64,000 bases of DNA from Macrostomum lignano (Eukaryota): assembly GCA_002269645.1 (NCBI GenBank), contig NIVC01002235.1:124001-188000 (forward strand), written 5' to 3'. Within the stretch, counting starts at the first letter, position 1. Each line of letters opens with the position of its first letter. Below the pieces are notes generated by a model. The model worked only from the letters and a program-made list of their open reading frames with translations. It ran no database searches and was not told where the DNA came from. Of this stretch, positions 649-54,100 are shown piece by piece. Made by a program: the position numbers and the translations under genes.

Positions 649-3250
649 CTCAGTTGCTGGGCCAGCATCCCAGATCCTCAGTTGCTGGGCCAGCATCCCA
701 GATCCTCAGTTGCTGGGCCAGCATTCCAGATCCACAGTTGCTGGGCTAGCCTCCCAGAGGGTCAGTTGCTGGGCCAGCCTCCCAGAGGGTCAGTTGGTGG
801 GCCAGCCTCCCAGATCCTCAGTTGCTGGGCCAGCCTCCCAGAGTGTCAGTTGCTGGGCCAGCATCCCAGAGGGTCAGTTGCTGGGCCAGCCTCCCAGATC
901 CTCAGTTGCTGGGCCAGCCTCCCAGATCCTCAGTTGCTGGGCCAGGCTCCTAGATCCTCAGTTGCTGGGCTAGCCTCCCAGAGTGTCAGTTGCTGGGCCA
1001 GCCTCCCAGATCCTCAGTTGCTGGGCCAGCCTCCCAGAGTGTCAGTTGCTGGGCCAGCTTCCCAGATCCTCAGTTGCTGGGCCAGCCTCCCAGAGTGTCA
1101 GTTGCTGGGACAGCATCCCAGAGGGTCAGTTGCTGGGCCAGCCTCCCAGATCCTCAGTTGCTGGGCCAGCCTCACAGAGTGTCAGTTGCTGGGCCAGCCT
1201 CCCAGAGTGTCAGTTGCTGGGCCAGCCTCCCAGATCCTCAGTTGCTGGGCCAGCCTCACAGATCCTCAGTTGCTGGGCCAGCCTCCCAGATCCTCAGTTG
1301 CTTGGCTAGCCTCCCAGATCCTCAGTTGGTGGGCCAGCCTCCCAGAGTGTCAGTTGCTGGGCCAGCATCCCAGAGGGTCAGTTGCTGGGCCAGCCTCCCA
1401 GATCCTCAGTTGCTGGGCCAGCCTCCCAGATCCCCAGTTGCTGGGCCAGCCTTTTAGATCCTCAGTTGCTGGGCCAGCCTCCCAGATCCTCAGTTGCTGG
1501 GCCAGCCTCCCAGATCCTCAGTTGCTGGGCCAGCCTCTTAGATCCTCGGTTGCTGGGCCAGCCTCCCAGAGGGTCAGTTGCTGGACAAGCCTCCCAGATC
1601 CTCAGTTGCTGGTCCAACCTCCCAGATGCTCAGTTGCTAGGCCAGCCTCCCAGAGGGTCAGTTGCTGGGCCAGCCTCCCAGAGGGTCAGCTGCTGGACAA
1701 GCCTCCCAGATCCTCAGTTGCTGGGCCAGCCTCACAGAGTGTCAGTTGCTGGGCCAGCCTCCCAGATCCTCAGTTGCTGGGCCAGCCTCCCAGATCCTCA
1801 GTTGCTGGGCCAGCCTCCCAGAGGGTCAGTTGCTGGACAAGCCTCCCAGATCCTCAGTTGCTGGGCCAGCCTCACAGAGTGTCAGTTGCTGGGCCAGCCT
1901 CCCAGATCCTCAGTTGCTGGGCCAGCCTCCCAGATCCTCAGTTGCTGGGCCAGCCTCCCAGAGGGTCAGTTGCTGGACAAGCCTCCCAGATCCTCAGTTG
2001 CTGGCCCAGCCTCACAGAGTGTCAGTTGCTGGGCCAGCCTCCCAGATCCTCAGTTGCTGGGCCAGCCTCACAGATCCTCAGTTGCTGGGCCAGCCTCCCA
2101 GATCCTCAGTTGCTTGGCTAGCCTCCCAGATCCTCAGTTGCTGGGCCAGCCTCCTAGATCCTCAGTTGCTGGGCTAGCCTCCCAGAGTGTCAGTTGGTGG
2201 GCCAGCCTCCCAGAGTGTCAGTTGCTGGGCCAGCCTCCCAGATCCTCAGTTGCTGGGCCAGCCTCCCAGATCCTCAGTTGCTGGGCCAGCATCCCAGATC
2301 CACAGTTTCTGCGCCAGCCTCCCAGATCCTCAGTTGCTGGGCCAGCCTCCCAGATCCTCAGTTGCTGGGCCAGCCTCCTAGATCCTCAGTTGCTGGGCCA
2401 GCCTCCCAGATCCTCAGTTGCTGGGCCAGCCTCCCAGATCCACAGTTTCTGCGCCAGCCTCCCAGATCCTCAGTTGCTGGACAAGCCTCCCAGATCCTCA
2501 GTTGCTGGGCCAGCTTCCCAGATCCTCAGTTGCTGGGCCAGCATCCCAGATCCACAGTTTCTGCGCCAGCCTCCCAGATCCTCAGTTGCTGGGCCAGCCT
2601 CCCAGATCCTCAGTTGCTGGGCCAGCCTCCCAGATCCTCAGTTGCTGGGCCAGCCTCCCAGATCCTCAGTTGCTGGGCCAGCATCCCAGATCCACAGTTT
2701 CTGCGCCAGCCTCCCAGATCCTCAGTTGCTGGGCCAGCCTCCCAGAGGGTCAGTTGCTGGACAAGCCTCCCAGATCCTCAGTTGCTGGGCCAGCCTCACA
2801 GAGTGTCAGTTGCTGGGCCAGCCTCCCAGATCCTCAGTTGCTGGGCCAGCCTCCCAGATCCTCAGTTGCTGGGCCAGCCTCCCAGATCCTCAGTTGCTGG
2901 GCCAGCTTCCCAGATCCTCAGTTGCTGGGCCAACATCCCAGATCCACAGTTTCTGCGCCAGCCTCCCAGATCCTCAGTTGCTGGGCCAGCCTCCCAGATC
3001 CTCAGTTGCTGGGCCAGCCTCCCAGAGGGTCAGTTGCTGGACAAGCCTCCCAGATCCTCAGTTGCTGGGCCAGCCTCACAGAGTGTCAGTTGCTGGGCCA
3101 GCCTCCCAGATCCTCAGTTGCTGGGCCAGCCTCCCAGATCCTCAGTTGCTGGGCCAGCCTCCCAGAGTGTCAGTTGGTGGGCCAGCCTCCCAGATCCTCA
3201 GTTGCTGGGCCAGCCTCCCAGATCCTCAGTTGCTGGGCCAGCCCCAGATC
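649..3250. repeat. 28-bp minisatellite (CAGTTGCTGGGCCAGCCTCCCAGATCCT)n
   Basis: Contiguous tandem units with point variants and no spacers. Confidence 0.97.
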
Positions 3251-3592
3251 CCAGATTTGAAAAATTAAGTAAGCCATCATCGGAAAACACTTTTCAGAAT
3301 GCTGGCTAATAGGTCTGATAAAATATTATTCCGTTGGATATTGTGTAAGAATATTCTTTATATAGAAACAGATGGGCAGAAAAAATCGGGTAAAATTATT
3401 ATTATCAGATAGGCTTTCATCTTGCACAGAGAAAAATATAGTTGTTGAATAACATAAAATATCCATGGCACAGGGGTCCCATGAGCCTACAGTCGGATTA
3501 ATATAGTTGATATGATTATAAATGTTAAAAGTGCTCCATGCATAGCCTAGCAAGATTTGGCGATGTCATCTCGAAGAGCTCTTTATTCTCTC

Positions 3593-13644: not shown

Positions 13645-14910
13645 CTGTCCTGTCAGTTCCTGTCAGTTCCTATCAGTTCCTATCAGTTCCTGTCAGTTCT
13701 TATCAGTTCCTGTCAGTTCTTATCAGTTCCTGTCAGTTCCTATCAGTTCCTATCAGTTCCTATCAGTTCCTGTCAGTTTCTATCAGTTCCTGTCAGTTTC
13801 TATCAGTTCCTGTCAGTTCCTATCAGTTTCTATCAGTTCCTGTCAGTTCCTATCAGTTCCTGTCAGTTCCTATCAGTTCCTATCAGTTCCTGTCAGTTTC
13901 TATCAGTTCCTGTCAGTTTCTATCAGTTCCTGTCAGTTCCTATCAGTTTCTATCAGTTCCTGTCAGTTCCTATCAGTTCCCGTCAGTTCCTATCAGTTCC
14001 TATCAGTTCCTGTCAGTTTCTGTCAGTTCCTATCAGTTCCTATCAGTTCCTGTCAGTTCCTATCAGTTCCTATCAGTTCCTGTCAGTTCCTATCAGTTCC
14101 CGTCAGTTCCTGTCAGTTCCTATCAGTTCCTGTCAGTTCCTATCAGTTCCCGTCAGTTTCTATCAGTTCCCGTCAGTTCCCGTCAGTTCCTATCAGTTCC
14201 TATCAGTTCCTATCAGTTCCTATCAGTTCCTGTCAGTTCCTATCAGTTCCCGTCAGTTCCTATCAGTTCCTATCAGTTCCTGTCAGTTCCTATCAGTTCC
14301 CGTCAGTTCCTATCAGTTCCTATCAGTTCCTGTCAGTTCCTATCAGTTTCTATCAGTTCCTGTCAGTTCCTATCAGTTCCTGTCAGTTCCTATCAGTTCC
14401 TATCAGTTCCTGTCAGTTTCTATCAGTTCCTGTCAGTTTCTATCAGTTCCTGTCAGTTCCTATCAGTTTCTATCAGTTCCTGTCAGTTCCTATCAGTTCC
14501 CGTCAGTTCCTATCAGTTCCTATCAGTTCCTGTCAGTTTCTGTCAGTTCCTATCAGTTCCTATCAGTTCCTGTCAGTTCCTATCAGTTCCTATCAGTTCC
14601 TGTCAGTTCCTATCAGTTCCCGTCAGTTCCTGTCAGTTCCTATCAGTTCCTGTCAGTTCCTATCAGTTCCCGTCAGTTCCTATCAGTTCCCGTCAGTTCC
14701 CGTCAGTTCCTATCAGTTCCTATCAGTTCCTATCAGTTCCTATCAGTTCCTGTCAGTTCCTATCAGTTCCCGTCAGTTCCTATCAGTTCCTATCAGTTCC
14801 TGTCAGTTCCTATCAGTTCCCGTCAGTTCCTATCAGTTCCTATCAGTTCCTATCAGTTCCTATCAGTTCCTGTCAGTTTCTGTCAGTTCCTATCAGTTCC
14901 TGTCAGTTCA
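13645..14910. repeat. 10-bp minisatellite (TCAGTTCCTR)n
   Basis: Tandem units visible directly. Confidence 0.97.
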
Positions 14911-15417
14911 TGTGAGTTCCTTTCTGTTCTCAAACGATTTCTAGAAACAGTCTTTTTACATTTCGGTTTGTTATAGTTGTCGATTATTTAATGTCATTTG
15001 TTAATCTAATAAATGCACTGTTGGCAAATACTAAATAAATAATTTTAAACCACAGTTGAGCACTATGCTGCACTATTATCTTATGCCCTAATGTTCTTAA
15101 TATAAAAATCACATTAGAATGCTTGATACGATCTCCAAGCAGTCTGAGAATCCGTAAGATAAAGAAGTTCGAAGTTCACTTCGTGCACACAGCACGCCAA
15201 GTTGTTGTACACAGCTTGTCTGTTGGCACTTTTGAGTTGACCTCAGTAGAACTGCTTTAAATAGCGTTGAAATTAACCCTGTGCTTTAACAAAACAACTT
15301 TCTCTTTGCAAGCTCAACTGCAGTGCTGTTGTTATCTTTGCCTAAAAGCAAGGTCAGTCAAACGTTTGTCTGATTATTTACGTTTTATTTTATTGCTGTT
15401 TTATTGCTGGTAGATGT

Positions 15418-16487
15418 TTAAACAGGTGTCGGGATCCTTAAACAGGTGCCAGGATGCTTAACCAGGTGTCAGGATGCTTAAACAGGTGTCAGGATGCTTA
15501 AACAGGTGTCAGGATGCTTAAACAGGTGTCAGGATGCTTAAATAGGTGTCAGGATGCTTAAACAGGTGTCAGGATCCTTAAACAGGTGTCAGGATGCTTA
15601 AACAGGTGTCAGGATGGTTAAACGAGTGTCAGGATGCTTAAACAGGTGTCAGGATGCTTAAACAGGTGTCAGGATCCTTAAACAGGTGTCAGGATGCTTA
15701 AACAGGTGTCATTAGGATCCTTAAACAGGTGTCAGGATGCTTAAACAGGTGTCTAGATGCTTAAACAGGTGTCAGGATGTTTAAACAGGTGTCAGGATGC
15801 TCAAAACAGGTGTCAGGATGCTTAACCAGGTGTCAGAATGCTTAAACAGGTGTCAGGATGCTTAAACAGGTGTCAGAATGGTTAAACAGGTGTCAGGATG
15901 CTTAAACAGGTGTCAGGATGCTTAAACAGGTGTCAGGATGGTTAAACGGGTGTCAGGATGCTTAAACAGGTGTCAGGATGCTTAAACAGGTGTCAGGATG
16001 CTTAAACAGGTGTCAGGATGCTTAAACAGGTGTCAGGATGGTTAAACGGGTGTCAGGATGCTGTAAACAGGTGTCAGGATGCTTAAACAGGTGTCAGGAT
16101 GGTTAAACGGGTGTCAGGATGCTGTAAACAGGTGTCAGGATGCTTAAACAGGTGTCAGGATGCTTAAACAAGTGTCAGGATGCTTAAACAGGTGTCATTA
16201 GGATCCTTAAACAGGTGTCAGGATGCTTAAACAGGTGTCAGGATGGTTAAACGGGTGTCAGGATGCTTAAACAGGTGTCAGGATGCTTAAACAGGTGTCA
16301 GGATGGTTAAACGGGTGTCAGGATGCCTAAACAGGTGTCAGGATGCTTAAACAGGTGTCAGGATCCTTAAACAGGTGTCAGGATGCTTAAACAGGTGTCA
16401 GGATGCTTAAACAGGTGTCAGGATGCTTAAACATGTGTCAGGACGCTTAAACAGGTGTCAGGACGCTTAAACAGGTGTCAGGACGCT
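15418..16487. repeat. 20-bp minisatellite (AAACAGGTGTCAGGATGCTT)n
   Basis: Tandem units ending about 90 bp upstream of the SLC7 ATG. Confidence 0.97.
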
Positions 16488-16577
16488 TGCCCAGAAGGTT
16501 GTGTGACCTCCGTTACGTTTAACTTAGCATCAGTAAAAATTATTACAATACTCAACTCGCCAGCTCAGACCGTCAGC

Positions 16578-30453: not shown

Positions 30454-31041
<588 letters not shown>

Positions 31042-32254
31042 ATTCTGATTCTGATTGGCATAAACCAGTCACTGTTTACTTATAAAATGTAGAAAGTGGT
31101 CTGAACATGACCACTGGTGTGTGCCGCATAACATGTGCCGCTGAGAAGCACAGTACGCTATTCTAGCAAACCTTGCTGATAGTTAAAGTTACAGACTAGG
31201 GCTGGGCCTTGTCTTGTGCAAGCAGTATCAAATAAAGTGTCATTCAGTGACGGCCTTCAATTCAGTGGGCCATGCACCAGTGGGCTGACCAGAGGGCTTC
31301 AGTTCAGTGGTCCGTCAATGGGCCACATCAGGCCACCTGTGGGCTGATCAGTGGGCCTCTGAGAGGGCCGCACTTTGGCCGCAGTGCCAGAAAATTCTTT
31401 GGCGAAATCTTTGCAATTTATTGTCTTAACACAAGTTTGGAAGAAACGAAAAACAGATGAATAAAAATGTAGATAAATGTTTTCAAAAATTGGCAGCGTG
31501 GGAGGAATGTATAAATATATTTTTGGCTATGATTTTTAGAGAATCAAAAAGGCCACCATAGTCGATCGCGAACACCATGCAATTTTGATAGATTAGTCAT
31601 ATATAATATTTTAGAACATGCAACGTGCCATTTTAATTCAGCGAGTTAATGAAAAAAAGTTGATCAAAAATTTCCGATGCTTAACGCATGAAATTTGGTA
31701 TTGGAAGGATTCGAAAAAATGAAAGTAACAATGCTTTCATTAATTTGAAGAAAAGTGAAAAAAATTACTTAGATTTCAAACCTCAAGAAACGTAAAACTT
31801 GCTGAAAAAATATTGTTTGCTTTGGACGTTAGCTTTGTTTAATATGATCTGTGTAGGGCCTAGATTGATTTCATAATAAAGACACGACTCCCTATACGTC
31901 ACGAATCTATATTCACCTAACTGATCACATTCATCTAACTATGAATTATATACATCCTACATGTTCATCATTCAAACTTACTCCTAGCTACATATAACAT
32001 CAAGCCAGAGGTCATCCACTGGTAGCATCTTAGAAACCACTTGGCTTAAGTAAACTTAAAATCAGACAAATAAACTCTCTTCTTTGGGGAATAGGTCATC
32101 ATGTTACTAACAGTAGCTTATTCAAAAAATTACGAGCTCGTAGTAAAGTTTGATACTTTCAGAAGCAATTCTTTAAAAATTTCCATCTTACCATGCTGGA
32201 TATTGTACTTTAGTAAAGTTTCTGCGAGTGTACATATTTGATGCGTTCAAAAAA

Positions 32255-35200
32255 TCAAAACTTTGGAAAGAAGAGCAGCTTTCGTAGTGTAGACTTATAG
32301 CACGGTATCTGCCAGTTATCAGTCTCATTAAAAACATCTGATGTCACCTTGGGCAGTAAATGTGTGAACTCTACTGGCGAATCCGGACTGTCATCGCTGT
32401 AAGCCTCAAGAACTGAGTCTTTGAACTTTTGAATGAACACGGTACCTGTGTTGCGATTACGATCTGACATGTCACACTCAACGACGCTGTAGATATAAAG
32501 CGAGTCCTCATTCTTACAGGAATTTCCAAGACCGTGGCAAACTGGGAGTGTTATCTCCCGTGGGACGTGACGACAGGCCTGTGTAATGAAAATCTTCGGT
32601 TTTCCTTCCAGCCATTTGTGAATTTGAATGCGCCCGAAAAGTTTGTCTAATTTGACTTCAGCTCCGTCTGACGAGTACACGGAGCCTAGGAAACCATGCG
32701 ACATGATGCACAGCAAGAACGCAGTGCAATTTTTGTACTCGTCCTCCGTGAATAATATTCTCAGCTCTCTGACCTCATCGAAAAAGGCTCTGCCCACGTC
32801 TCGTAACAGATGATACTTAAAACCCAGCTTTTGCAGACTCAGGGGCAAGCAGTCGAGCTCATCGTCTCTCTCAGCCCCGACGCGTGTTTGAAGTCGTGCA
32901 GGATCGTTAAATATGATATTGTTGATCACAATGGCCAATCGATCATCTGAGTTGCCAACGTCGTATCGTTGCCTTTGAGTAGCTGTCGCCCCACCAGAAG
33001 ATGCTGAGCCACCCGCAGTTCCCTGCGCAGATCCGCCAGCAGAACCTCCAGCTGAGGCGCCAACACCACCTGCTGAGTTGTCCGGGTCCTCTGGATTTTC
33101 ATGATCCAAATAGACTTGGCCTTGATTGGTTTGATTCGTCAGTTGTCTAATGCTGAAAGTTTTTAAATCGTCGTAAATGTACATTCAAAAAAACTTTATT
33201 TTTGGCAAGTCTTATTTAAGCATCACAAAACTCACCACTCTCGAATAAAAGCTGCACACTCCCAATGCTTGCCCAGCTCCGCCCACTGCAGGCTTGTTCT
33301 CTTGTACTCTCCAACAACTTCCCAATATTGTAGGCTATCGATGCGCTCACTCAGAACCTTCAAAACCTCCTGACAGCCCTGTCGAGCGGCCCAAATAACT
33401 GGTGTATTACCAAATCGATCAGCAGGTCTGATGCTGGATCCGGAGTCAAGCAATATTTTCACCACTTTAGCGAAGTTATTTTTCGCTGCATGCGTCAAAG
33501 CGGTGTAGCCAAGCCGATCCTGTAAAAATTGTTGTGTCTCCAGCTTGTTTGCGTATTTTAAGTGTGTAATTGCAATTTTCTCGTGAACTCACCTCGAGAT
33601 TGAGATCTGCATCCATCTGTAGCAGCTCTGAAACTACTTCATCATGGCCAGAGTGAGCTGCGAGCATCAAAGGCGTCTGTCGCATGTTATCGGGCCTGTT
33701 CGTCTCAATCTGCAGTACGTTTTCGTCCAGAATTCGCCGAAACACTTTCACCGGTTGCAGGTGGCCGAGAAAGCTCGCCCAACTCAGGGCGGATCTGCCT
33801 GATACGTCGCAAATCGAGACGACTGCTGGGGCCTTTTCTAATAGCTTCTCGACTATGTCGCTTCTGTTCTTCTTGGCAGCAATTACCAGCAGCGTCTCCT
33901 TAAATGGCGGCAGCTGAATACTTAAGTCCGATGAGCTGTGAACGTGACGATTAAGATCTTCATCACTCCAATCTTGTGGTCTCCTGTAAAATGAACAAAT
34001 GATGCTACAGAGATAATTGTAAAATGTACCTTTGATCCGTGTTATTTTCATTGAAAAAAATACTTTAGTCACTAACCTTCTTGCAGGTTTCGTCGTGTAC
34101 TCATTCAGTACAAGGTTCTTTAGCTTATTTCTCAAACGTTCAACATTATCCCAGTCTCTTGTGTCGAATGCCAGACGATTTTCGGTTAGTATAGTTTCCA
34201 TTTTGGCTAGACAGAACTGTACTTGCTTCTTAGAGCTGCTGTAATGAGCGATGGTCATGTGCTCTTCAAAGTCAGGGTACTCCTGTAATTGCGAAAACCA
34301 GGCATCAATTTCGCTGTTTGTAACTCCTAACAGCTCGGCTCTCAGGCTCCACGCGAGGCAGCAGAAGTTCACGTACAGATGAGGGCTTCCCGTCCGAGAT
34401 TTTCGAATAACAAGCAGGTTTCTGGTAAATTCTGGCAGGCATGAGAAATCCGCAACTTCTGAAGGACAGGGAAGACAGAATCGCCATGCCCAATCAGTGT
34501 CCTGAAACACTTGATGCATCTTTTCAATTTGATCTGGCTTCCAGCTTCGCATCACTGTGTGGTTGTCGAGTCCTTTCAGCACTTCTTTTGCGGCTTCTAA
34601 GTCTTCAACTTTATGTAGCAGAAGAATCTTCAAACAAGCTACTGAAGTCTTGCACCAAGTCAGGTTCTCTAGAGGCTTTAAGAGTGCCATGGCATCATCA
34701 GCCTTGTCCGAAAACTGTTCAAAGTAGCTACGAACCACATCGTACAGCTTTCCGAATGTAGAGACGCTGATATCTGGGTTTCCTTCAGTCTGCAACGGGT
34801 TCAAGGCTTGCAGTGGAACCATTGTAAATGGATGAAAATAGAAATTTTCATTCTGCAGCGGCTTCAGCTGGTGCTGCAGCCTTTTTACGACAGCTTCAGC
34901 TACGTTAGTTGTGCAAAGTCGCATGAGCTGGTCTCGAACTCTCGATTTCGTTTGCTGAAAGTCGCCACCAACACCAGCATTGGTGAAGTACAGAGGGCTG
35001 TCCGGGAGAAAAAAACTCGGCATACATATGTCCGGATCGGGATTGGAGTCGATGAACTCGAGTAGTTTGTCGAGCGACTCGTTTAAAAGCCAAATTAAGT
35101 TGTCTGGCCTCCAAATTTGTTCATCAAAACCGTGCTTATGAAGTAAGTAAAGCAGCAATGTCTTGGCGTGGTACGTCTTGAGACCCGCTGTAGCGACTTG

Positions 35201-35905
35201 ACCAGATACAAATATTTTGAGTACGAACTTCATGAGGATGTAAAGTTGACCTTGACAATCAGTTAAACTCCTCATGATGGCTTTTTCCAGAAAGCTGAAA
35301 CTAACCCGAAGTTCGTGGTCAGCAGTGGGTCTGGCTGTTCGAACCAGATGCAAAGGCGATACGTTTGCTTCAAAGCAGCCACGAATAACTGTCTGCTCAG
35401 CAATCGAGTTGGAGCAGCATGGATTGGCAAAGCAGAAGCTCTCAGCCGGCTTGGAGCCGCATTCTGCAGCAGTCATAGCTGGTTCACTTCCTGGAAGAGT
35501 TTTAAAATACGCAGCGCGTCACTACATGTAGTTAGTAAAATAAAATATAAAAATTAATTTAAGTCAGAGTCTCTCCTTCTCTGTGGCCTTACCAATGGTA
35601 GCATCCACTTGGACATAACCTTGTTTAACTTCAAATCTGGTTTTCTTCACCGCTTTGCAGCTGCATCCATTGAGTAAATGCATTGGCTCTCGAGGCCCGA
35701 CAAGACATGTCCAATTCATGTCACAATCATCCGACGCTTGGCCATTTAGCTGGGTCAGACTGGAACCCCATCCCTCAGCGAAGCTTCCTACCAAGTGAAT
35801 GTATTCATTGTTCTCGTGAATTTGCCTGACGATATCCTCCATCGAGTCCGCCATTTTTTGCTGCAGTTTAGCTCTCTGCCAAGTGAATCCAGCTTCTTTC
35901 AGCAT
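32255..35905 (-). CDS. Mab-21/cGAS-like domain + ankyrin repeats + caspase fusion protein, 1099 aa
   Basis: Exons 35905-35593, 35490-34077, 33983-33593, 33519-33236, 33152-32255; GT-AG, phases 1/2/0/2, total 3300 nt. Mab-21: LVGSFAEGWG..DDCDMN, LRVSFSFLEKAIMRSL, LYILMKFVLK, GLKTYHAKTLLLYLL, CMPSFFLPD. About six ANK repeats (GRSALSWA, QTPLMLAA, GYTALTHAA, GNTPVIWAA). Caspase: LAIVINN, TRVGAERD, LCIMSHGFLG, KPKIFITQACRH, SDRNRNTGTVFIQ. Confidence 0.85.
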
Positions 35906-36304
35906 CTTGTGAAGAGCAATGCTTTTTTAGGCGTCAGCTTCCATTCTAAAATTGAGGAATTTTTCATTCAACAAATGGACAACTATAAGGAATCTGTTAG
36001 TTACAAATAAATTAAGGGAAGCAAGCTGTGCAGTTAGGACAGATTGGGACGCAGCATTGACTTAAGTATCTATTCTGAAGCTCTGAAAATTGGAAATGCT
36101 TCTAGTAAATTTGAATAGCAGAACAGTCCTATCTAGAAAATTTTAGGATCTTAATTTGGCCCCCATATATAAATGTTAGCTATCTAGTGTACCGATCAAT
36201 TTGTGCTCGTACCTACCTATATGGCTCACTATATTAAGCCAAGCACTTACATGCATTGTTGCAGATAATAAAAATCGACTACACCTACCCTAATAGGGCA
36301 TAAA

Positions 36305-36545
36305 TGCAGCCCAGCTCAGCCGCAGCTATTGCGCGGCGCACCTGAAGGCCGTGTACCGCTGTTCAGTCCAAGGACTGGGGGTTGTCGCCACACACACCCT
36401 CAATTACCCCAGCTGACGCCTAGTGGTTAGAGCGACTAACTCACGACTGAAAGGTCGGAGGTTCGATTCTCAACCCATTCGGAACATTTTGTGTCCCTCA
36501 GCAAGACACTTAACTCTTGCATTTCTTCAGTCCACCCAGCTGTAA
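36305..36545. mobile_element. SINE family A copy with inverted 5' half
   Basis: 36305-36415 is the 3' half on the minus strand; 36416-36545 is the tRNA head plus central domain on the plus strand. Confidence 0.7.
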
Positions 36546-36734
36546 AAGATATTGAAGAACAATAAACATACTTTTACCACACTTACGGCTGCTCCAACGA
36601 GAAGTAGGATGTATGCAAGACTCTGTACTTGAAGTATTCGCTGAAATATAGCATAGCTCACGGTTAAAACGCAAAGTTTTTGGAATTCTAAAATGTAACG
36701 ATACTGGTAATTCACCAACGCAAGTCCAATGCAA

Positions 36735-37700
36735 TTACCCGTCAAACAGTCGCACGATTTGATAATGTCCGAGTTTCTCGGCCAACTGTATACTGGTGAG
36801 ACCATCCTTGTCTTTGTGCAGTGCATTCGCACCGTGGTCAAGCAGCACTTTTGCCGCTCTAACCTGGCCTGTCATGCAAGCCCGAGTGAGAGCCGTTCTG
36901 CCATCATCATCTGTGACGCTGTCAAGGGAGACTTCTATTTCCAGTAGGTGTTGGATTAGTCTGTGCTGACCAGCATCTGCAGCAAGCATCAGCAAGTCGC
37001 CCAGCGGTGCTCTGTCCTCATTTTCTTCTAAAACCTTTTGCAGCAGAGCTTTCGACGTTTCTATGAGGCCGCCTGATACGCAGCGAGCCAAAATCTTCCA
37101 GGCGTCCGATGACGATTCAATAACGTCCAATTTACCTTGCAGAGTTGCTTTTATCGCTGATTTACCGCCAATAATAAGTCTTTTCTCTCCTAGTAGCAAG
37201 TTGAGATCAATGCGGAACTTTTTAAATTTTTCGATCTCAACAGGTGCTGCTTGAAGCTTATTATCTGATGGATTGTAAAAACTGCATTTTAGCACTGGAA
37301 AATGTTTTTTTGATGCAAAACCAGACAAATTTCTCAAATCCAAATTCACATTTTTATCGCTGAAGACGTCAAATTCGGTTAGGTTTGTCATGCGACTGCT
37401 GGGAAAAAACATTTGATTCTTATCGATTATTGACTCGCCTAACCAGTCAATAATTCTTAACTTCTCAATAAAGAGAAATTTGGCGTCAAATATATCCCGC
37501 CAAGTTCGGTAAAATACTCGTAGGAAGTCGGCAAAATTCGGTGGCAGATTCAGTAAAACGAAATCTTTTCTTTTTTTATCCTTTTGAGACTCGATGCAAT
37601 ACTTGTTACGTGTTTTAGTCTCATGCCGAAACACTTCTGTCTGCAAATCTTGGAATTTCCGGCGATCGAATTCTTGATTTGAAACGTTTTCAAAGCTCAT
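36735..37700 (-). CDS. Ankyrin-repeat ORF with an uncharacterised N-terminal region; possible 5' exon of the Mab-21-caspase gene
   Basis: ATG at 37700 (MSFENVSNQEF). Three C-terminal ANK repeats (DLLMLAADAGQ, GRTALTRACMTG, GLTSIQLAEKLGH). Donor GG|gtaatt at 36739/36738 matches the phase of acceptor ttttag|A at 35945. Confidence 0.75.
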   Translation of the reverse strand: MSFENVSNQEFDRRKFQDLQTEVFRHETKTRNKYCIESQKDKKRKDFVLLNLPPNFADFLRVFYRTWRDIFDAKFLFIEKLRIIDWLGESIIDKNQMFFPSSRMTNLTEFDVFSDKNVNLDLRNLSGFASKKHFPVLKCSFYNPSDNKLQAAPVEIEKFKKFRIDLNLLLGEKRLIIGGKSAIKATLQGKLDVIESSSDAWKILARCVSGGLIETSKALLQKVLEENEDRAPLGDLLMLAADAGQHRLIQHLLEIEVSLDSVTDDDGRTALTRACMTGQVRAAKVLLDHGANALHKDKDGLTSIQLAEKLGHYQIVRLFDG

Positions 37701-37989
37701 AATGTAGCTAACTGCACATATAAAAGCAAAGTATGATTTCAACGGACGATGGAGGCAGCCGTATCTCCCTAAAAGCAGAAATAATGGGTGTCGCTTTACA
37801 TCGGTTGATTTTTTGAGTCAAAATTTAATGTACGAGCAACCGTTTTGTGTTCCTATTTGGTTTTCTTCATTCAAATAGCTGGAAGGCATGGCTAAAGTAA
37901 AGAATCTCGCAGAGAGGACCATACGCTAAAATTAGTCTTGGTGGACAAAGAGAGGATTAGGAAATACATATATAGATTTTCACGACATG

Positions 37990-48125: not shown

Positions 48126-51100
48126 ATGGACATCGCCAAGATTCTGGACCTGTCATCTCAAGCGGCGCCATCAGGAGATACGGCAGAGGTCCCGTCAGCT
48201 GGAACTGACAGTCCCGAAGATGCTTCGGTATTAGAAGTTTCAACTACAACTGCAGCAACAGCAGCAGCGGTAGCAGCCGAGCCCGGAGACTCGGGAAAAT
48301 TGCAGCAACTGCAGTGTAGGAATGATCTTAGGTAAGAACAACTTCGGAATTCCCTGCAATTCATACCTCAAGCACCACATAGAGAATGACTGCGGACCAG
48401 AGGAGGAGATTAAGGAGATGGAGTAGAGGAGAGAGAGACAGAGAGAGAAAAGAAAGCTAGGAGAAAGGCGAATGAATATCAGAGACGAGAGGAGACAAGA
48501 GGAGACGAGAGGAGACGAGAGATGAAATATGAAATGAGGGAGGAGAGAAGCGAGAGGGAGAGGAGAGAGGAGAGAGGAGAGAGGAGAGAGGAGAGAGGAG
48601 AGAGGAGAGAAGGGAGAGGGAGAGGAGAGAGGAGAGAAGCGAGAGGGAGAGGAGAGAGGAGAGAGGAGAGAGGAGAGAGGAGAGAGGAGAGAAGGGAGAG
48701 GGAGAGGAGAGAGGAGAGAGGAGAGAAGGGAGAGGGAGAGGAGAGAGGAGAGAGGAGAGAAGGGAGAGGGAGAGGAGAGAGGAGAGAGGAGAGAAGGGAG
48801 AAGGAGAGGAGAGAGGAGAGAGGAGAGAGGAGAGAAGGGAGAAGGCGAGAGGAGAGAGGAGAGAGGAGAGAAGGGAGAAGGCGAGAGGAGAGAGGAGAGA
48901 GGAGAGAAGGGAGAAGGCGAGAGGAGAGAGGAGAGAGGAGAGAAGGGAGAAGGTGAGAGGAGAGAGGAGAGAGGAGAGAAGGGAGAGGGGAGAGGAGAGA
49001 GGAGAGATGGGAGAGGGGAGAGGAGAGAGGGGAGAAGGAGAGGAGAGAGGAGAGAGGAGAGAAGGGAGAAGGCGAGAGGAGAGAGGAGAGATGGGAGAGG
49101 GGAGAGGAGAGAGGAGAGATGGGAGAGGGGAGAGGAGAGAGGGGAGAAGGAGAGGAGAGAGGAGAGAGGAGAGAAGGGAGAAGGCGAGAGGAGAGAGGAG
49201 AGAGGAGAGAAGGGAGAAGGCGAGAGGAGAGAGGAGAGAGGAGAGAAGGGAGAAGGTGAGAGGGGAGAGGAGAGAGGAGAGATGGGAGAGGGGAGAGGAG
49301 AGAGGAGAGATGGGAGAGGGGAGAGGAGAGAGGGGAGAAGGAGAGGAGAGAGGAGAGAGGAGAGAAGGGAGAAGGAGAGGAGAGAGGAGAGAGGAGAGAG
49401 GAGAGAAGGGAGAAGGCGAGAGGAGAGAGGAGAGAGGAGAGAAGGGAGAAGGTGAGAGGGGAGAGGAGTGAGGAGAGATGGGAGAGGGGAGAGGAGAGAG
49501 GAGAGATGGGAGAGGGGAGAGGAGAGAGGGGAAAGGCGAGAGGGGAGAGGAGAGAGGAGAGAGGGGAAAAGCGAGAGGAGAGAGGGGAGAGGAGAGAGGG
49601 GAAATGCGAGAGGAGAGAGGGGAGAGGAGAGAGGAGAAAGGCGAGAGGAGAGAGGGGAGAGGAGAGAGGAGACGCGGAGAGAGATGGTAAAAAGAAGAAG
49701 AAAGAAAAGAGAAGAGAGAGGCGATCAGATCGAAGAGAGCTGAGAAGAGCCACAAACAAACATTGAGCGGACTGGATTGTTGCTGAGCAGTTTCAAAGGA
49801 CCCGAGAGCCGGATAGAGAGGCTTCGCGGGTCGGAGTTTGACAATCCATTTTCAGAACTCAATTCCTTCTACACAACTTCTATTCAATGTCTGAATTGCT
49901 CTCTCGGAGTCTCTCGCTTTGTAGAATTCTAAAAGAATTTTTAGCTAATTCGAATACGCTCGTAATTGTTCAGAAGTTCTACGCTTCTAATTGGAGTAAT
50001 GTCTTTACCGAAGAAATTGACGCTCAAGTTTGCTGTCAGTCTGCAGAAACTCAACCCCAATCCCAATATTCTTTTTAAAAAGTAAATTCTTCTTATCCTT
50101 GCAATGACACTTGCAAGAAAACTGTATATTAATTGGCAAAGTTGTGGAGCTGGCGTGGGCTGAATTGATGGAAGCTGGACAAAGTCTGCAGAACGAGTTA
50201 AAAGAATTCTACATCATGAGGGCAAATACATCATTAAATTTCTTGAGCCGGGCTGCGCGCAACTCAAGTGGCTCTCGATGCATGGGGGTGGCTGTTGGTT
50301 TTGAAAGTGTAGTGAGAGTCTTACAGCTGTGTACTGACTTTTCCACGAACGCCTTGCAATTTTTTCTCACGCGATGATATCCCAATAATCCCCACCTTTA
50401 GCAGCAGTCATCAACAGGTGGATGGGAGGTCCGTCTTGGAGAGTTGAGCAGGGTTGAGTTTGCAGATGGAGACTTCGGGGATGTGGAGAGCGAGCTCCCC
50501 AGCTCAATGCAACTTTGTCTCAACGGGTTGCCCTCTGAATACACAAAAACAGGCCATGAGGCAAGACGCATCTGCCATTGGGTTTCACAAGCCCTACTCG
50601 AGCTGCAGCACTCCATTCTGCTCAAATGCAAGCATTCCTAGATAATAGGCAATTGTTACCCTCTATAAGGCTCAATATGGAATCTTGCGCTTCTTAAGTT
50701 TTTTAGCAAACACCCATGCACCAACCCTTTAACAAGCAGCGCAAACATCTCTGAGAATCCTCACTGCTATCGGATCTGATAGACACATAAAAGCCTCTAC
50801 TCAAGACTGCAACTGCAAGCCGCGGCATCACTGAGCTGCGCATGCAGTGCGTATTGAGCGAAACTGACAATTATGGAGGATTTTGAGTTTTTTTCTGCAT
50901 CGTGTGCAGCTTTCTCTCAGTGCACTTCTCAATGAGGATCGAGTGCATTGGTATAATAGATGATTGATCAGCTAATGACGATATAATTGCTCTTGCTCAA
51001 GGAGGCTCAACATCTTCTTCACGTTTGACTCGAATTGTTGTCAATCTTCACTTTTTGACCCGAGGCTCAGCAATATAACTCTGATGATGGATGATGAGAA

Positions 51101-54100
51101 TTGAAGAGCAGGTGCTCAGAGCGAAGACAGACTTGTTTACAGTAGCTCTGAAGATATGCACTCAATGCCTATTGGAGATGAGTAGATGGGGCACCTGACC
51201 CCCTAGAATTGAGACGCGGAGGATAACGCCTCCTTCAAAAAGCGCTCAGCTGCAGTGGGGAAGTTCCAGTCAAAATTTCATTTGTTTAAAGCTTTTAAAA
51301 ACCACATGCAGTCCGAGGAGCCTCTCTATCAGGCCCTCGGGTCCTTTAAAACTTCACAATAGCAATCCGCCCCTACTCAGCTCCGCCCCTACTTGTGTCT
51401 CTACTCAGCTCTCTTCTCTTTTCTCGCCTCTTCAATCCCTTCTCTCTCCGATCTCCTCTCCTCTCGTCTCTCGTCTCTCCTCTCCAGTTTCGCCTATCCT
51501 CTCTCCTCTCATCTCTCCTCTCCAGTTTCGCCTATCCTCTCTCCTCTCTCCTCTGTCCTCTCCTCTCTAGTTTCGCCTATCCTCTCTCCTCTCATCTCTC
51601 CTCTCCAGTTTCGCCTATCCTCTCTCCTCTCTCCTCTGTCCTCTCCTCTCCAGTTTCGCCTATCCTCTCTCCTCTCATCTCTCCTCTCCAGTTTCGCCTA
51701 TCCTCTCTCCTCTCTCCTCTCTCCTCTCTCCTCTCTCCTCTCTCCTCTCTCCTCTCTCCTTTCTCCTTTCTCCTCTCTCCTCTCTCCTCTCTCCTTTCTC
51801 CTCTCTCCTCTCTCCTCTCTCCTCTCTCCCCTCTTCTCTCTCCCCTCTCCTCTCTCCCCTCTTTCGTATCCTCTCTCCTCTCTCCTCTCTCCTCTCTCCT
51901 CTCTCCTCTCTCCTCTCTCCCCTCTTTCGTATCCTCTCTCCTCTCTCCTCTCTCCCCTCTTTCGTATCCTCTCTCCTCTCTCCTCTCTCCCCTCTTTCGT
52001 ATCCTCTCTCCTCTCTCCTCTCTTATCTCTCCTCTCTCCTCTCTCCTCTGTCCTCTCTCCTCTCTCCCCTCTCCTCTCTCCTCTCTCGTCTCTCCCCTAC
52101 TTCGTATCCTCTCTCTTCTCTTCTCTTTTATCCACTCGCCTCTCCTTTCTCCTATCTCTCTTCTCTCTTCCCTTCTTCCCTCTCGCTCTTCTCTCCCTTC
52201 GGGCCCGCAGTGATGTGCTAGATTCTTTATCCGGCCTTTGAGGTAAAGATTTTGCCGACCCCTGCTGTTACTCAAATAAAAATATCAAAGAAACTTCTCT
52301 GTAAAAATGAACTTTTTTGTATTTTTGCATCTTTCAGCGACTTAACGGGCTCATTGACTCGAGCCCGCTCGGATCTCGAAGTCGCAGTCAGGCACTGCGA
52401 GGAACAAAGTCGACGAGTAGATCGGTACGGTCGCGAGCTCGAATCTCTGCAACAGGAGCGCCTGGCCCAGGTGGAGCAGCTCCGACAGTTGCACGTGGAA
52501 ATTTCCAGCGTAAGCAATGACTCTATTTGTACTAGTAAGCAGCACTTCGCTTGAAACTCGTACAAATATGCTTCTCTGTCTTTGGGGAAATTTTTCACAG
52601 GTCAATATATATTTAAATTTGATATAATCGCCCACAAAGTCACAGAATCGCTCACAGAAACCCCATACAACATAGAATCACCCACAGAACCATAGAATTG
52701 CCCACAGAACTATAAATTCGCCCACAGAACCATAGAATCACCTACAGAACCATAGAATCACCACAAAACCATAGAATCACCCACAGAACCATAGAATCAC
52801 CGACAGAACCATAGAATCACCCACAGAACGATAGAATTGCCCACAGAACCATAGAATCGCCCACAGAACCATAGAATTGCCCACAGAACTATAAATTCGC
52901 CCACAGAACCATAGAATCACCCACAGAACCATAGAATCACCACAAAACCATAGAATCACCCACAGAACGATAGAATTGCCCACAGAACCATAGAATCACC
53001 CACAGAACGATAGAATCACCCACAGAACCATAGAATCGTCCACAGAACCATAGAATCACCCACAAAACCATAGAATCACCCACAGAACAATAGAATCACC
53101 CACAGAACCATAGAACCACCCACAGAACGATAGAATCGCCTACAGAACCATAGAATCGTCCACAGAACGATAGAATCGCCCACAGAACCATAGAATCGTC
53201 CACAGAACAATAGAATCACCCACAGAACCATAGAATCGCCCACAGAACCATAGAATCGCCCACAGAACCATAGAATCGCCCACAGAACGATAGAATCACC
53301 CACAGAACCATAGAATCGCCCACAGAACCATAGAATCGCCCACAGAACAATAGAATCGCCCCTAAAGCTCCATATCGGATAACCAAAACAATTATCATGG
53401 TCACGTAGAATCATTGCTTCCGTTTCAGCGAGCGGTTGACATTTCAATTATAATTCTACAATTATATTGGAGACTTGCTTCGTTGCTAAAACACATTCAC
53501 TTCCATATAGCCTGCATATGAAGATTACGTAATCCATTAGCACTTGGTGCTGCTTGAAGTTCCATGTTCAATCTTTTTAAGCACCCATCTAGCGATACAG
53601 ATCTATCTCTTATTCTGCATCTTCCCTTGACATATTTCGTGCTGGTCAGTAAGGGCTATCATGTCTAGAAATTTGAAGATTTTTTCAAAGCATTAACATT
53701 TTTGTTGTCTTCTTTTGCAACATGTCAATCGGAAGATATGTTAGTGTTTGTCAGTAGAAACAAAAAACATTTGCTGTTTCTGCAAAAAGGAGAAGAGAGA
53801 TCAGATACAGAAATCTCCAGTGCCCCAAAGTATTTGACCCCTGAACTGAACTGATGGGAGCTGTGTGCATGGAATATCTCACAAGCCCAAAACTTCATAT
53901 AGGCTTTGTACGGAATTTCCCATTGTCAAAAAACTCTTGCTAACTAATTCCGCTAGCTTAACAACTTAAACTAATTTGACAATGTGAAATTTCGAGCTTG
54001 TGAAGAATCGAGCTTGTGAAGGATCAAGCTTGTGAAGAATCGAGTCTGTGAAGAATCGAGTCTGTGAAGAATCGAGTGTGTGAGGAATCGAGTGTGTGAA

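What the first reader, a model, noticed from the sequence alone, without database searches (positions are those of the whole stretch)
35711..35793. The cGAS-like active site looks degenerate while the caspase dyad is intact
Seen: GSFAEGWGSSLTQLNGQASDDCDMNW. Established: Pol-beta-type NTases use G-S followed by [DE]-h-[DE] to bind catalytic metals. Inference: aligned without gaps to the family pattern as I recall it (..D-S-D-I-D..), this reads C-D-M-N, a D-to-N change, and the third acidic position near KPAESFCFANPCCS also seems weak. That would make the domain a sensor-only pseudoenzyme that signals directly to the caspase rather than via a second messenger. Caveat: D-C-D-M offers an alternative intact register.
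Basis: partly seen in the sequence, partly recalled or inferred. Interest (0 to 1): 0.7.

Follow-up and report, generated by a model that had tools for sequence, protein, structure and literature searches.

The report
Dead cGAS-like domain fused to caspase
A flatworm (Macrostomum lignano) gene joins a cGAS-like sensor domain, which has lost two of its three catalytic metal-binding residues, to an apparently working caspase, so detection may trigger the protease directly rather than through a nucleotide messenger.

Summary
The peptide GSFAEGWGSSLTQLNGQASDDCDMNW is encoded on the minus strand at 35788-35711. It lies in a five-exon, 1099-aa gene identical to the public Macrostomum lignano protein PAA59752.1.

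The protein reads: cGAS/Mab21-fold domain, helical region, ankyrin repeats, Gly/Ser linker, caspase.

Across 110 non-identical paralogous domains the motif is x-S-D-[IVLM]-D. Positions 62 and 64 are Asp in 96% and 93%; position 60 varies. Profile alignment to human cGAS pairs D62 with E225, N64 with D227 and S122 with D319. A confident AlphaFold model (pLDDT 88) matches cGAS and places these residues at the start of the expected strands.

Of 36 family-conserved positions, this protein differs at four, three of them inside the S-D-I-D motif. The caspase His/Cys dyad and Asp-pocket residues are intact.

A second caspase-fused paralogue (PAA93319.1) also carries Asn at position 64 and has lost the third acid. 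Among 41 family members scanned, only these two have a caspase.

Direct signalling from a pseudoenzyme sensor to the caspase is plausible but untested. In this copy a TAA also cuts off the N-terminal ankyrin module.

The parts
35711..35788 (-). G40-S41 ... D62-M63-N64-W65: the nucleotidyltransferase GS loop and metal-binding strand. N64 (35716-35714, AAT) replaces the family-invariant Asp.
   Evidence: coordinates; family conservation; hhalign: G40 S41 = cGAS G212 S213, D62 = E225, N64 = D227; strand 63-68 in the model.
35438..35443 (-). E121-S122. S122 occupies the third catalytic acid position (cGAS D319).
   Evidence: profile alignments to pig and human cGAS; Asp in 71 of 87 aligned paralogues; strand 121-130.
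34814..35905 (-). cGAS/Mab21-fold domain, residues 1-330: exon 1 (35905-35593), a 102-nt intron, and the first part of exon 2.
   Evidence: AF2 pLDDT 88, pTM 0.90; the top 46 Foldseek PDB hits are all cGAS (E 3e-9, TM 0.51-0.60); profile against PDB cGAS, E 2e-8. Pfam Mab-21_C is borderline.
33941..34813 (-). Family-specific helical region, residues about 331-590, with no Pfam match. It contains an in-frame 93-nt intron (34076-33984).
   Evidence: conserved in the paralogues; the splice model equals PAA59752.1.
33236..33983 (-). C-terminal ankyrin repeats: exons 3 and 4 (33983-33593 and 33519-33236).
   Evidence: Pfam Ank_2, E 6e-27; the ankyrin-caspase junction is conserved in paralogue P0029.
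32255..33152 (-). Exon 5: Gly/Ser-rich linker and caspase domain (residues 872-1094). H953 is at 32698-32696 and C994 at 32575-32573. The stop codon is at 32257-32255.
   Evidence: Pfam Peptidase_C14, 89.9 bits against a cutoff of 21.4; alignment to caspase-3 structures, E 1e-14.
35927..35929 (-). In-frame TAA in the exon that begins at 35945. The 97% identical paralogue has TCA (Ser) here. It separates the upstream N-terminal and ankyrin exons from the 1099-aa ORF.
36587..37742 (-). Upstream exons: an ORF ending at the donor at 36739 (N-terminal region plus ankyrin repeats) and a micro-exon at 36640-36587. In paralogue PAA80948.1 these form part of the same 1444-aa protein.

Best explanation
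The window carries Macrostomum lignano gene BOX15_Mlig012150g1. It belongs to a large, lineage-specific family of ankyrin-bearing cGAS-like (cGLR/Mab21-fold) proteins.

In this member and its near-identical copies the fold is kept. However, two of the three metal-binding carboxylates are replaced: N64 for the cGAS D227 equivalent and S122 for the D319 equivalent. The adjacent family-invariant Ser61 is also replaced. The domain is therefore most likely a pseudoenzyme that cannot make a nucleotide second messenger.

It is joined in one polypeptide, through a helical region, ankyrin repeats and a flexible Gly/Ser linker, to a caspase domain. That caspase has an intact His-Cys dyad and an intact Asp-specific S1 pocket.

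The most likely mechanism is as follows. The dead cGAS-like module, with its ankyrin and helical regions, still acts as a ligand- or partner-binding module. On activation it oligomerises, as cGAS does on DNA. This brings the fused caspase domains together and activates them by induced proximity, without CARD or DED adaptors and without a cyclic nucleotide and STING step.

Shown here: the architecture, the fold, the substitutions and their register, the family conservation and the intact caspase residues. Inferred: loss of catalysis, ligand sensing, oligomerisation and caspase activation.
For: - **Gene model.** Five exons, all GT..AG and in phase. The product is identical to the public transcript-based protein PAA59752.1. 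That annotation derives from RNA-seq assemblies (PMC5730564).
- **Same architecture elsewhere.** It recurs at two other loci: PAA80948.1 (1444 aa, 97% identical, locus L002) and PAA93319.1 (2111 aa).
- **Fold.** AF2 pLDDT 88 and pTM 0.90. The top 46 Foldseek hits are all cGAS. Profile searches hit cGAS and cGLR1 structures.
- **Register.** hhalign pairs G40 S41 with G212 S213, D62 with E225, N64 with D227 and S122 with D319. The cGAS sequence used was verified identical to PDB 5V8O.
- **Family conservation.** Position 62 is Asp in 106 of 110 domains, position 64 in 102 of 110, and position 122 in 71 of 87. Position 60 is variable.
- **Where the changes fall.** Only 4 of 36 conserved positions are changed, and 3 of them lie in the SDID motif.
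- **Second caspase-fused paralogue.** It also has D64N, S61N and H97R, and its third acid is Thr. Only these two of 41 scanned family members carry a caspase.
- **Caspase.** The catalytic and S1 residues are conserved.
- **Selection.** Overall dN/dS between the two copies is 0.34.
- **Precedent.** The cGLR active-site motif is required for product synthesis (PMC9980059).
Against: - There are no biochemical, ligand or expression data.
- The N-terminal part of the hhalign alignment has low posterior confidence. It appears only with relaxed or global settings. HMMER local alignments never reach the GS and DxD region.
The protein keeps three acids next to the site (D59, D60, D62) plus E121, which could in principle substitute.
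- Within the NTase domain the two copies differ by only 1 synonymous and 6 non-synonymous changes. Constraint on that domain is therefore not demonstrated.
- The window copy has an upstream in-frame stop and may be a decaying duplicate.
- The two caspase-fused lineages may share a single ancestral loss, because the tree is unresolved. In that case the correlation between caspase fusion and site loss rests on one event.
Confidence: 0.55

Rival explanations
1. The domain is still an active nucleotidyltransferase. Neighbouring acids (D59 or D60 with D62, and E121) take over metal binding in a shifted register, and the caspase is regulated by, or in parallel with, a nucleotide product.
For: The local sequence DDCD keeps three acids, one more than the paralogue consensus AADSD, and E121 lies immediately before S122. 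Position 60 is acidic in 96 of 110 paralogues.
Against: Position 60 is non-acidic in 14 paralogues that keep S-D-h-D, whereas positions 62 and 64 are near-invariant. hhalign and the model's strand boundaries place D62 and N64 at the cGAS E225 and D227 positions. E121 is one residue out of phase on a beta strand, so its side chain would point away. The other caspase-fused paralogue has no acid at or next to the third position (QQTT).
Confidence: 0.1
2. This is a decaying, non-functional duplicate. The active-site changes and the upstream stop codon are steps in pseudogenisation within a highly redundant, hidden-polyploid genome.
For: There is an in-frame TAA at 35929-35927 where the paralogue has Ser. 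The assembly has extensive duplicated blocks at 95% identity or more (PMC5730564). In the NTase domain the count is 6 non-synonymous to 1 synonymous change.
Against: The 1099-aa ORF and all four introns are intact. Overall dN/dS is 0.34, with 0.21 in the caspase and 0.26 in the helical region. The same active-site state occurs in three copies, two of them without the stop in their models (P0175, P0001), and in the distant paralogue P0038. 32 of 36 conserved fold positions are retained.
Confidence: 0.15
3. The dead NTase pocket has become a binding site, for an NTP or for a nucleotide signal made by the catalytically intact paralogues. The protein is then a receptor and effector downstream of other cGLRs rather than a primary sensor.
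For: Dozens of paralogues with complete motifs coexist in the genome, and five were selected as candidate cGLR enzymes (PMC9980059 Table S3). From my own knowledge, other Mab21-fold proteins without detected catalysis bind nucleotides (MAB21L1 with CTP, see PDB 5EOM; MiD51 with ADP).
Against: No evidence here bears on ligand binding. No paralogue has been shown to be active.
Confidence: 0.15
4. The fusion is an annotation artefact: the Mab21-ankyrin part and the ankyrin-caspase part are separate genes.
For: WormBase-type models of the near-identical copies stop before the caspase (P0019 ends after exon 3; P0001 stops earlier and is frame-shifted). A stand-alone ankyrin-caspase gene exists (P0029), with no Mab21 domain within 10 kb upstream.
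Against: Exons 3 and 4 split one ankyrin repeat in phase across a 73-nt GT..AG intron. Transcript-based GenBank models at three loci join the parts.
Confidence: 0.05

Closest known systems
Animal cGAS-like receptors (cGLRs), in particular the ankyrin-bearing M. lignano family sampled by Li et al. 2023 (PMC9980059, Table S3 nos. 89-93, e.g. PAA68676.1)
   Same: Same protein family: 41-49% identity to the closest intact paralogues. Same cGAS fold with an NTase core plus a C-terminal helix bundle. N-terminal ankyrin repeats are present in full-length copies.
   Different: It fails the defining active-site motif (D-M-N-W in place of [DE]h[DE]h, and E-S-F in place of h[DE]h). It also carries a C-terminal caspase. 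That paper lists ankyrin, TPR, death-domain and multi-cGLR fusions, and its held supplements contain no caspase.
[quoted passage not shown]
   Same: A caspase domain preceded directly by ankyrin repeats, in a flatworm. The paralogue P0029 is a plain ankyrin-caspase.
   Different: Here the pro-domain also contains a cGAS-like domain and a helical region. That paper describes ANK caspases as specific to parasitic flatworms and reports only a kinase-like pro-domain caspase for M. lignano, with no mention of Mab21. Placement within their clade was not tested.
Mab21-fold proteins without demonstrated catalysis (MAB21L1/L2; MiD49/MiD51; the latter two from my own knowledge)
   Same: The cGAS/Mab21 fold is retained while nucleotidyltransferase activity is absent or undetected, and the domain serves as a scaffold or binding module. 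MAB21L1 appears among the structural hits.
   Different: These are different subfamilies. None is fused to a protease or to an immune-type effector.
Induced-proximity caspase platforms (apoptosome, inflammasomes, DISC), and bacterial nucleotide-activated caspase-like proteases such as SAVED-CHAT (my own knowledge)
   Same: The logic is the same: a sensor module controls a caspase-fold protease.
   Different: In those systems sensor and protease are separate proteins, linked by CARD, DED or PYD adaptors or by a diffusible nucleotide. Here they are one chain, with no death-fold domain and probably no nucleotide signal.

Membership tests
cGLR (criteria of Li et al. 2023, PMC9980059) | Active-site motif h[QT]GS [X8-20] [DE]h[DE]h [X50-90] h[DE]h | tested here: not met
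   The window has L-V-G-S, then X20, then D-M-N-W, then X55, then E-S-F. N64 and S122 replace the second and third acids. Intact paralogues read M-T-G-S ... D-I-D-W ... Q-D-T.
cGLR (criteria of Li et al. 2023) | Homology across both the NTase core and the C-terminal helix bundle | tested here: met
   hhalign and hmmsearch align residues about 98-309 to cGAS (E 1e-5 to 2e-8). The N-terminal core aligns in extended mode. Identity to catalogued M. lignano cGLRs is 41-49%.
cGLR (criteria of Li et al. 2023) | AlphaFold-predicted structural homology to cGAS or CD-NTases | tested here: met
   Model pLDDT 88.1 and pTM 0.90. Foldseek PDB top hits are cGAS, with E 3e-9, probability 1.00 and TM 0.51-0.60 over about 350 columns.
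cGLR | Ligand-dependent synthesis of a nucleotide second messenger | not testable with these tools
   This needs recombinant protein and TLC or LC-MS assays.
Mab-21 (Pfam PF03281 / PF20266) | Score above the Pfam gathering threshold | tested here: inconclusive
   PF20266 Mab-21_C scores 24.7 bits on exon 2 alone (cutoff 24.1) but 21.9 bits on the full protein. PF03281 was not detected.
Caspase (Peptidase C14A) | Pfam domain, His-Cys catalytic dyad and Arg/Gln/Arg S1 pocket | tested here: met
   PF00656 scores 89.9 bits against a cutoff of 21.4. H953, C994, R891, Q992 and R1032 align to caspase-3 H121, C163, R64, Q161 and R207.
Caspase (Peptidase C14A) | Proteolytic activity after Asp | not testable with these tools
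   This needs an enzyme assay.
Platyhelminth ANK caspases (PMC11463336) | Ankyrin repeats as the pro-domain immediately N-terminal to the caspase | tested here: met
   Ankyrin repeats span residues about 600-800, a linker follows, and the caspase spans 872-1094.
Platyhelminth ANK caspases (PMC11463336) | Phylogenetic placement in the monophyletic ANK-caspase clade | not tested

The most novel reading that the evidence does not exclude
A cGLR-derived pattern-recognition module has given up nucleotide signalling and become the built-in activation platform of a caspase. The result is a single-chain, adaptor-free, STING-independent 'cGLR-caspase' sensor-executioner. It may have evolved by joining a member of the flatworm ankyrin-cGLR family to a flatworm ankyrin-caspase. 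Loss of the NTase active site would then follow from, or be a precondition for, direct coupling.
Probability: 0.35. Interest if true: 0.8.

Novelty: new variant of a known kind. Interest (0 to 1): 0.6.

Why it matters
cGLRs are understood as enzymes that pass on detection through diffusible nucleotides. Caspases are understood to be recruited through death-fold adaptors. A natural protein that hard-wires a catalytically dead cGAS-fold domain to a live caspase would show a third wiring scheme for animal innate immunity or cell death.

It would also give a simple, testable model for how the cGAS fold transmits ligand binding by oligomerisation alone. And it would tie two flatworm-specific oddities together: the expanded ankyrin-cGLR family and the ankyrin caspases.

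M. lignano has transgenesis and RNAi, so the idea can be tested directly.

Tried and rejected
- **Single-sequence search of residues 1-313 against PDB.** Only spurious sigma-factor hits.
- **Pfam.** It does not see the N-terminal Mab-21 NTase domain. Only Mab-21_C is found, at borderline score.
- **HMMER profile searches against PDB.** They align only from about residue 78 or later, so they settle the third acid but not the GS and DxD register. hhalign in default local mode behaves the same way. The register needed relaxed (mact 0.05) and global hhalign runs, where confidence is low.
- **First AlphaFold run with 16 close paralogues.** Unusable: pLDDT 52 overall and below 50 in the core. A 34-sequence alignment fixed this.
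- **Homologue search with ankyrin, linker and caspase together.** No hits, probably because low-complexity and ankyrin words swamped it.
- **Alternative D60-C-D62 register.** Considered and rejected.
- **V100-D101 ('VQVDAT') as the third acid.** Rejected, because that position is variable in paralogues.
- **Mab21 domain upstream of the ankyrin-caspase P0029.** None found within 10 kb, by tblastn or by HMM on six-frame ORFs.
- **Bootstrapped NJ tree.** It could not resolve whether the caspase-fused lineages are sisters (window clade with P0038 in 9 of 200 replicates). A first attempt timed out.
- **dN/dS for the NTase domain alone.** Uninformative, with only 7 differences.
- **Literature searches for a cGLR or Mab21-caspase fusion.** Nothing found.
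- **ARAGORN.** No tRNA in the window.

Full report
**What is at the coordinates**

The minus strand of 35711-35788 encodes GSFAEGWGSSLTQLNGQASDDCDMNW. The window is eukaryotic.

I assembled a five-exon model on the minus strand:
- 35905-35593
- 35490-34077
- 33983-33593
- 33519-33236
- 33152-32255

All introns are GT..AG, 73-102 nt long, and in phase. The model gives 1099 aa.

A protein returned later from the public collection (P0032) is identical over all 1099 residues. It is PAA59752.1, also BOX15_Mlig012150g1 and UniProt A0A267EG68, from Macrostomum lignano. The GenBank annotation of that assembly derives from genome-guided RNA-seq transcript assemblies (PMC5730564). The exon joins are therefore transcript-based, not only my inference.

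**Architecture**

Pfam finds ankyrin repeats (about 600-800), a caspase domain (872-1094; 89.9 bits against a cutoff of 21.4) and a borderline Mab-21_C match (204-269). Residues about 331-590 form a family-specific helical region with no Pfam match. A Gly/Ser-rich linker precedes the caspase.

**Is the N-terminal domain cGAS-like?**

A single-sequence search against PDB failed. A profile of paralogues hits cGAS, cGLR1, MB21D2 and MAB21L1 structures, with E down to 2e-8.

AlphaFold with 16 close paralogues was poor (pLDDT 52). With a 34-sequence alignment that includes diverse family members it gave pLDDT 88.1 and pTM 0.90. Foldseek against PDB returned cGAS for the top 46 hits (E 3e-9, probability 1.00, TM 0.51-0.60, about 350 aligned columns), followed by MAB21L1. 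The fold assignment is solid.

**The family**

The domain belongs to a very large expansion.
- 79 representative clusters score E<1e-30.
- Every cluster I looked up is from M. lignano.
- Most members carry N-terminal ankyrin repeats (38 of 41 scanned).
- Li et al. 2023 already treated this family as cGLRs. Their Table S3 lists five M. lignano members cloned for their enzyme screen, including PAA68676.1 (my P0006) and PAA45980.1 (P0183) (PMC9980059).
- Their cGLR definition requires the motif h[QT]GS [X8-20] [DE]h[DE]h [X50-90] h[DE]h, and they show that the motif is needed for product synthesis.

**Which residues are catalytic, and what does the window protein have?**

*Family conservation.* I examined 110 non-identical domains aligned to a family HMM.

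| Position | Family state | Window residue |
|---|---|---|
| 61 | Ser in 102 | Cys |
| 62 | Asp in 106 | Asp |
| 63 | Ile, Val, Met or Leu in all | Met |
| 64 | Asp in 102, Asn in 7, Lys in 1 | Asn |
| 60 | Asp 67, Glu 29, other 14 (G, N, R, Q, A, S, K) | Asp |

The conserved dyad is therefore D62 and D64, embedded in S-D-h-D-h. This matches the [DE]h[DE]h rule. D60-S-D62 does not match it, because Ser is not hydrophobic.

hhalign of the 34-sequence family profile against it, in both relaxed-local and global modes, gives these pairings, with a 9-residue insertion in the GS loop:
- G40 S41 with G212 S213
- D62 with E225
- M63 with F226
- N64 with D227

Posterior confidence in this N-terminal stretch is low. 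Both modes agree, and they agree with the conservation pattern.

*Structure model.* The confident model has strand 36-39, a short helix 41-44 and strand 63-68. D62 sits just before the strand and N64 is its second residue. This is the arrangement I recall for E225 and D227 in cGAS.

*Third acid.* HMMER and hhalign align the family's R-P-A-Q-D-T-C-H-A-I to cGAS I-S-V-D-I-T-L-A-L, with good confidence. The family Asp falls on D319. The window reads K-P-A-E-S-F-C-F-A, so S122 sits at that position and E121 lies one residue earlier. This position is Asp in 71 of 87 aligned paralogues. In the model it is the second residue of strand 121-130.

*Conclusion.* One acid is retained (D62) and two are lost (D64N and D122S).

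**Is this decay or specific loss?**

Of 36 positions conserved at 85% or more across the family, the window protein differs at four: S61C, I63M, D64N and H97Y. Three of the four lie inside the catalytic motif, and the other 32 are kept. This is the pattern expected when the fold is maintained and catalysis is abandoned.

The same state (DDCD[MI]NW and KPAESF) occurs in at least three copies: the window, PAA80948.1 (P0175, 97.4% identical) and A0A1I8-type model P0001 (92%).

Codon comparison of the window gene with the P0175 locus (L002) gives dN/dS 0.34 overall, 0.21 in the caspase and 0.26 in the helical region. The NTase domain has only 1 synonymous and 6 non-synonymous differences, which is too few to judge.

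**A second caspase-fused paralogue**

PAA93319.1 (P0038, 2111 aa) has the same order of domains: ankyrin, Mab21, helical region, ankyrin, caspase. It reads D-N-D-I-N-W, with Q-Q-T-T at the third site. So it too has Asn at position 64 and no third acid. It also shares changes at S61 and H97.

Among 41 representative family members scanned with Pfam, only the window protein and P0038 have a caspase.

Other members with degenerate sites and no recognised caspase also exist: P0064/P0074, P0082, P0088, P0110, P0116 and P0048.

A bootstrapped NJ tree, built without the motif columns, places the window clade, P0038 and P0064 in a well-supported group with the 'TGS' paralogues (185-200 of 200 replicates). 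It does not resolve whether the caspase-fused lineages are sisters (9 of 200 for window with P0038; 34 of 200 with P0064 added). One shared loss and two parallel losses both remain possible. The association between caspase fusion and site loss is therefore suggestive, not statistical.

**The caspase**

Alignment to caspase-3 structures (E 1e-14) and to the paralogous caspases shows the following conserved residues:
- H953 in S-H-G
- C994 in Q-A-C-R-H
- R891, Q992 and R1032, equivalent to caspase-3 R64, Q161 and R207

The intersubunit linker contains K-N-E-D|S, a plausible processing site (my inference). No CARD or DED domain is present.

A separate M. lignano gene (P0029, 38% identical) is a plain ankyrin-caspase with the same junction. 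It has no Mab21 domain within 10 kb upstream. [quoted passage not shown] That study attributes them to parasitic species and does not mention a Mab21 domain (PMC11463336).

The simplest history is a fusion between an ankyrin-cGLR family member and an ankyrin-caspase.

**How it most likely works**

Established background, from my own knowledge:
- cGAS dimerises and oligomerises on its ligand.
- Initiator caspases are activated by induced proximity.
- Mutating the cGAS metal-binding acids abolishes synthesis.

Inference: the dead cGAS-like module, together with its ankyrin and helical regions, still recognises something and oligomerises. This brings the fused caspases together and activates them, with no nucleotide messenger and no adaptor.

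I put about 0.8 on 'not a working NTase' and about 0.55 on the whole mechanism.

Rival explanations:
- residual activity through D59, D60 or E121;
- a decaying duplicate;
- a nucleotide-binding receptor downstream of the intact paralogues;
- an annotation artefact.

**A complication in this copy**

In PAA80948.1 the protein is 1444 aa. It has an N-terminal region plus ankyrin repeats, joined through a micro-exon and the peptide MEADVSKSIALHKLL.

The window has the same exons in phase: the exon ending at 36739, the micro-exon at 36640-36587, and the exon starting at 35945. However, the Ser codon is TAA (35929-35927), and seven codons later CTG has become the annotated ATG (35905).

This copy therefore encodes the Mab21-ankyrin-caspase part without the N-terminal module, if it is translated at all. 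Spliced-leader trans-splicing is common in this species and could supply a 5' end at that acceptor, but I have no evidence for it.

**Novelty**

Already known:
- the gene, which is in public databases as an uncharacterised 'caspase family p20 domain-containing protein';
- the family, published as cGLRs;
- ankyrin caspases;
- Mab21-fold pseudoenzymes.

I found no description of a cGLR or Mab21-caspase fusion, nor of the coincidence between that fusion and loss of the NTase active site.

I rate it a new variant of a known kind, of moderate to high interest, and readily testable.

Noticed in passing
window 35927-35929 (-), with 35903-35905 (-): An in-frame TAA sits where the 97% identical paralogue (L002) has TCA (Ser). 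The annotated start ATG is CTG (Leu) in that paralogue. The gene is split here into an upstream ORF of about 390 aa (N-terminal region plus ankyrin) and the 1099-aa ORF. The acceptor at 35946/35945 could serve as a spliced-leader trans-splice site, since trans-splicing is common in M. lignano.
   Followed up: partly
window 36739-37742 (-) compared with L002 / P0175 residues 87-314: The N-terminal region is only about 74% identical between the two copies, with indels, while the rest is about 97%. dS is also uneven between domains (0.005 in the NTase, 0.06-0.08 in the helical region and caspase). This suggests a mosaic history or gene conversion.
   Followed up: partly
window about 36440-36500, inside the intron 35946-36586: A tRNA-like stretch with D-arm and T-arm-like motifs, probably a tRNA-derived SINE fragment. 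ARAGORN does not call a tRNA anywhere in the window.
   Followed up: partly
window residues H76, C81, C83, H97 (Y in the window; codon 35617-35615), C129, C130: A set of family-conserved His and Cys residues in the NTase core looks like a possible metal (Zn) site. H97 is replaced in both caspase-fused lineages (Y in the window, R in P0038). Its role is unknown.
   Followed up: no
window 649-3251, 13648-14929, 15413-16488, 30454-31042, 48536-49683, 51409-52126 and others: The window is dense in minisatellite and simple-repeat arrays (25 TRF rows with score of 200 or more, e.g. a 28-mer repeated 93 times, (GGCA) x147, and GA-rich tracts that explain the extreme GC and AT skew at 48-52 kb).
   Followed up: no
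L001 9178-11659 (M. lignano NIVC01000713.1): P0029 is a stand-alone ankyrin-caspase, 38% identical in the caspase domain, with no Mab21-like domain in the 10 kb upstream. This is an ANK caspase in a free-living flatworm, although the published survey attributes that type to parasitic species.
   Followed up: partly
family members P0064/P0074, P0082 cluster, P0088, P0110, P0116, P0048/P0118: Several other M. lignano paralogues also have degenerate NTase motifs (GSGID, DSNVN, DSDIN, RTDIN, DVEVK; third acid H, S or R) but no recognised caspase. Loss of catalysis has therefore happened repeatedly, or their gene models are truncated.
   Followed up: no
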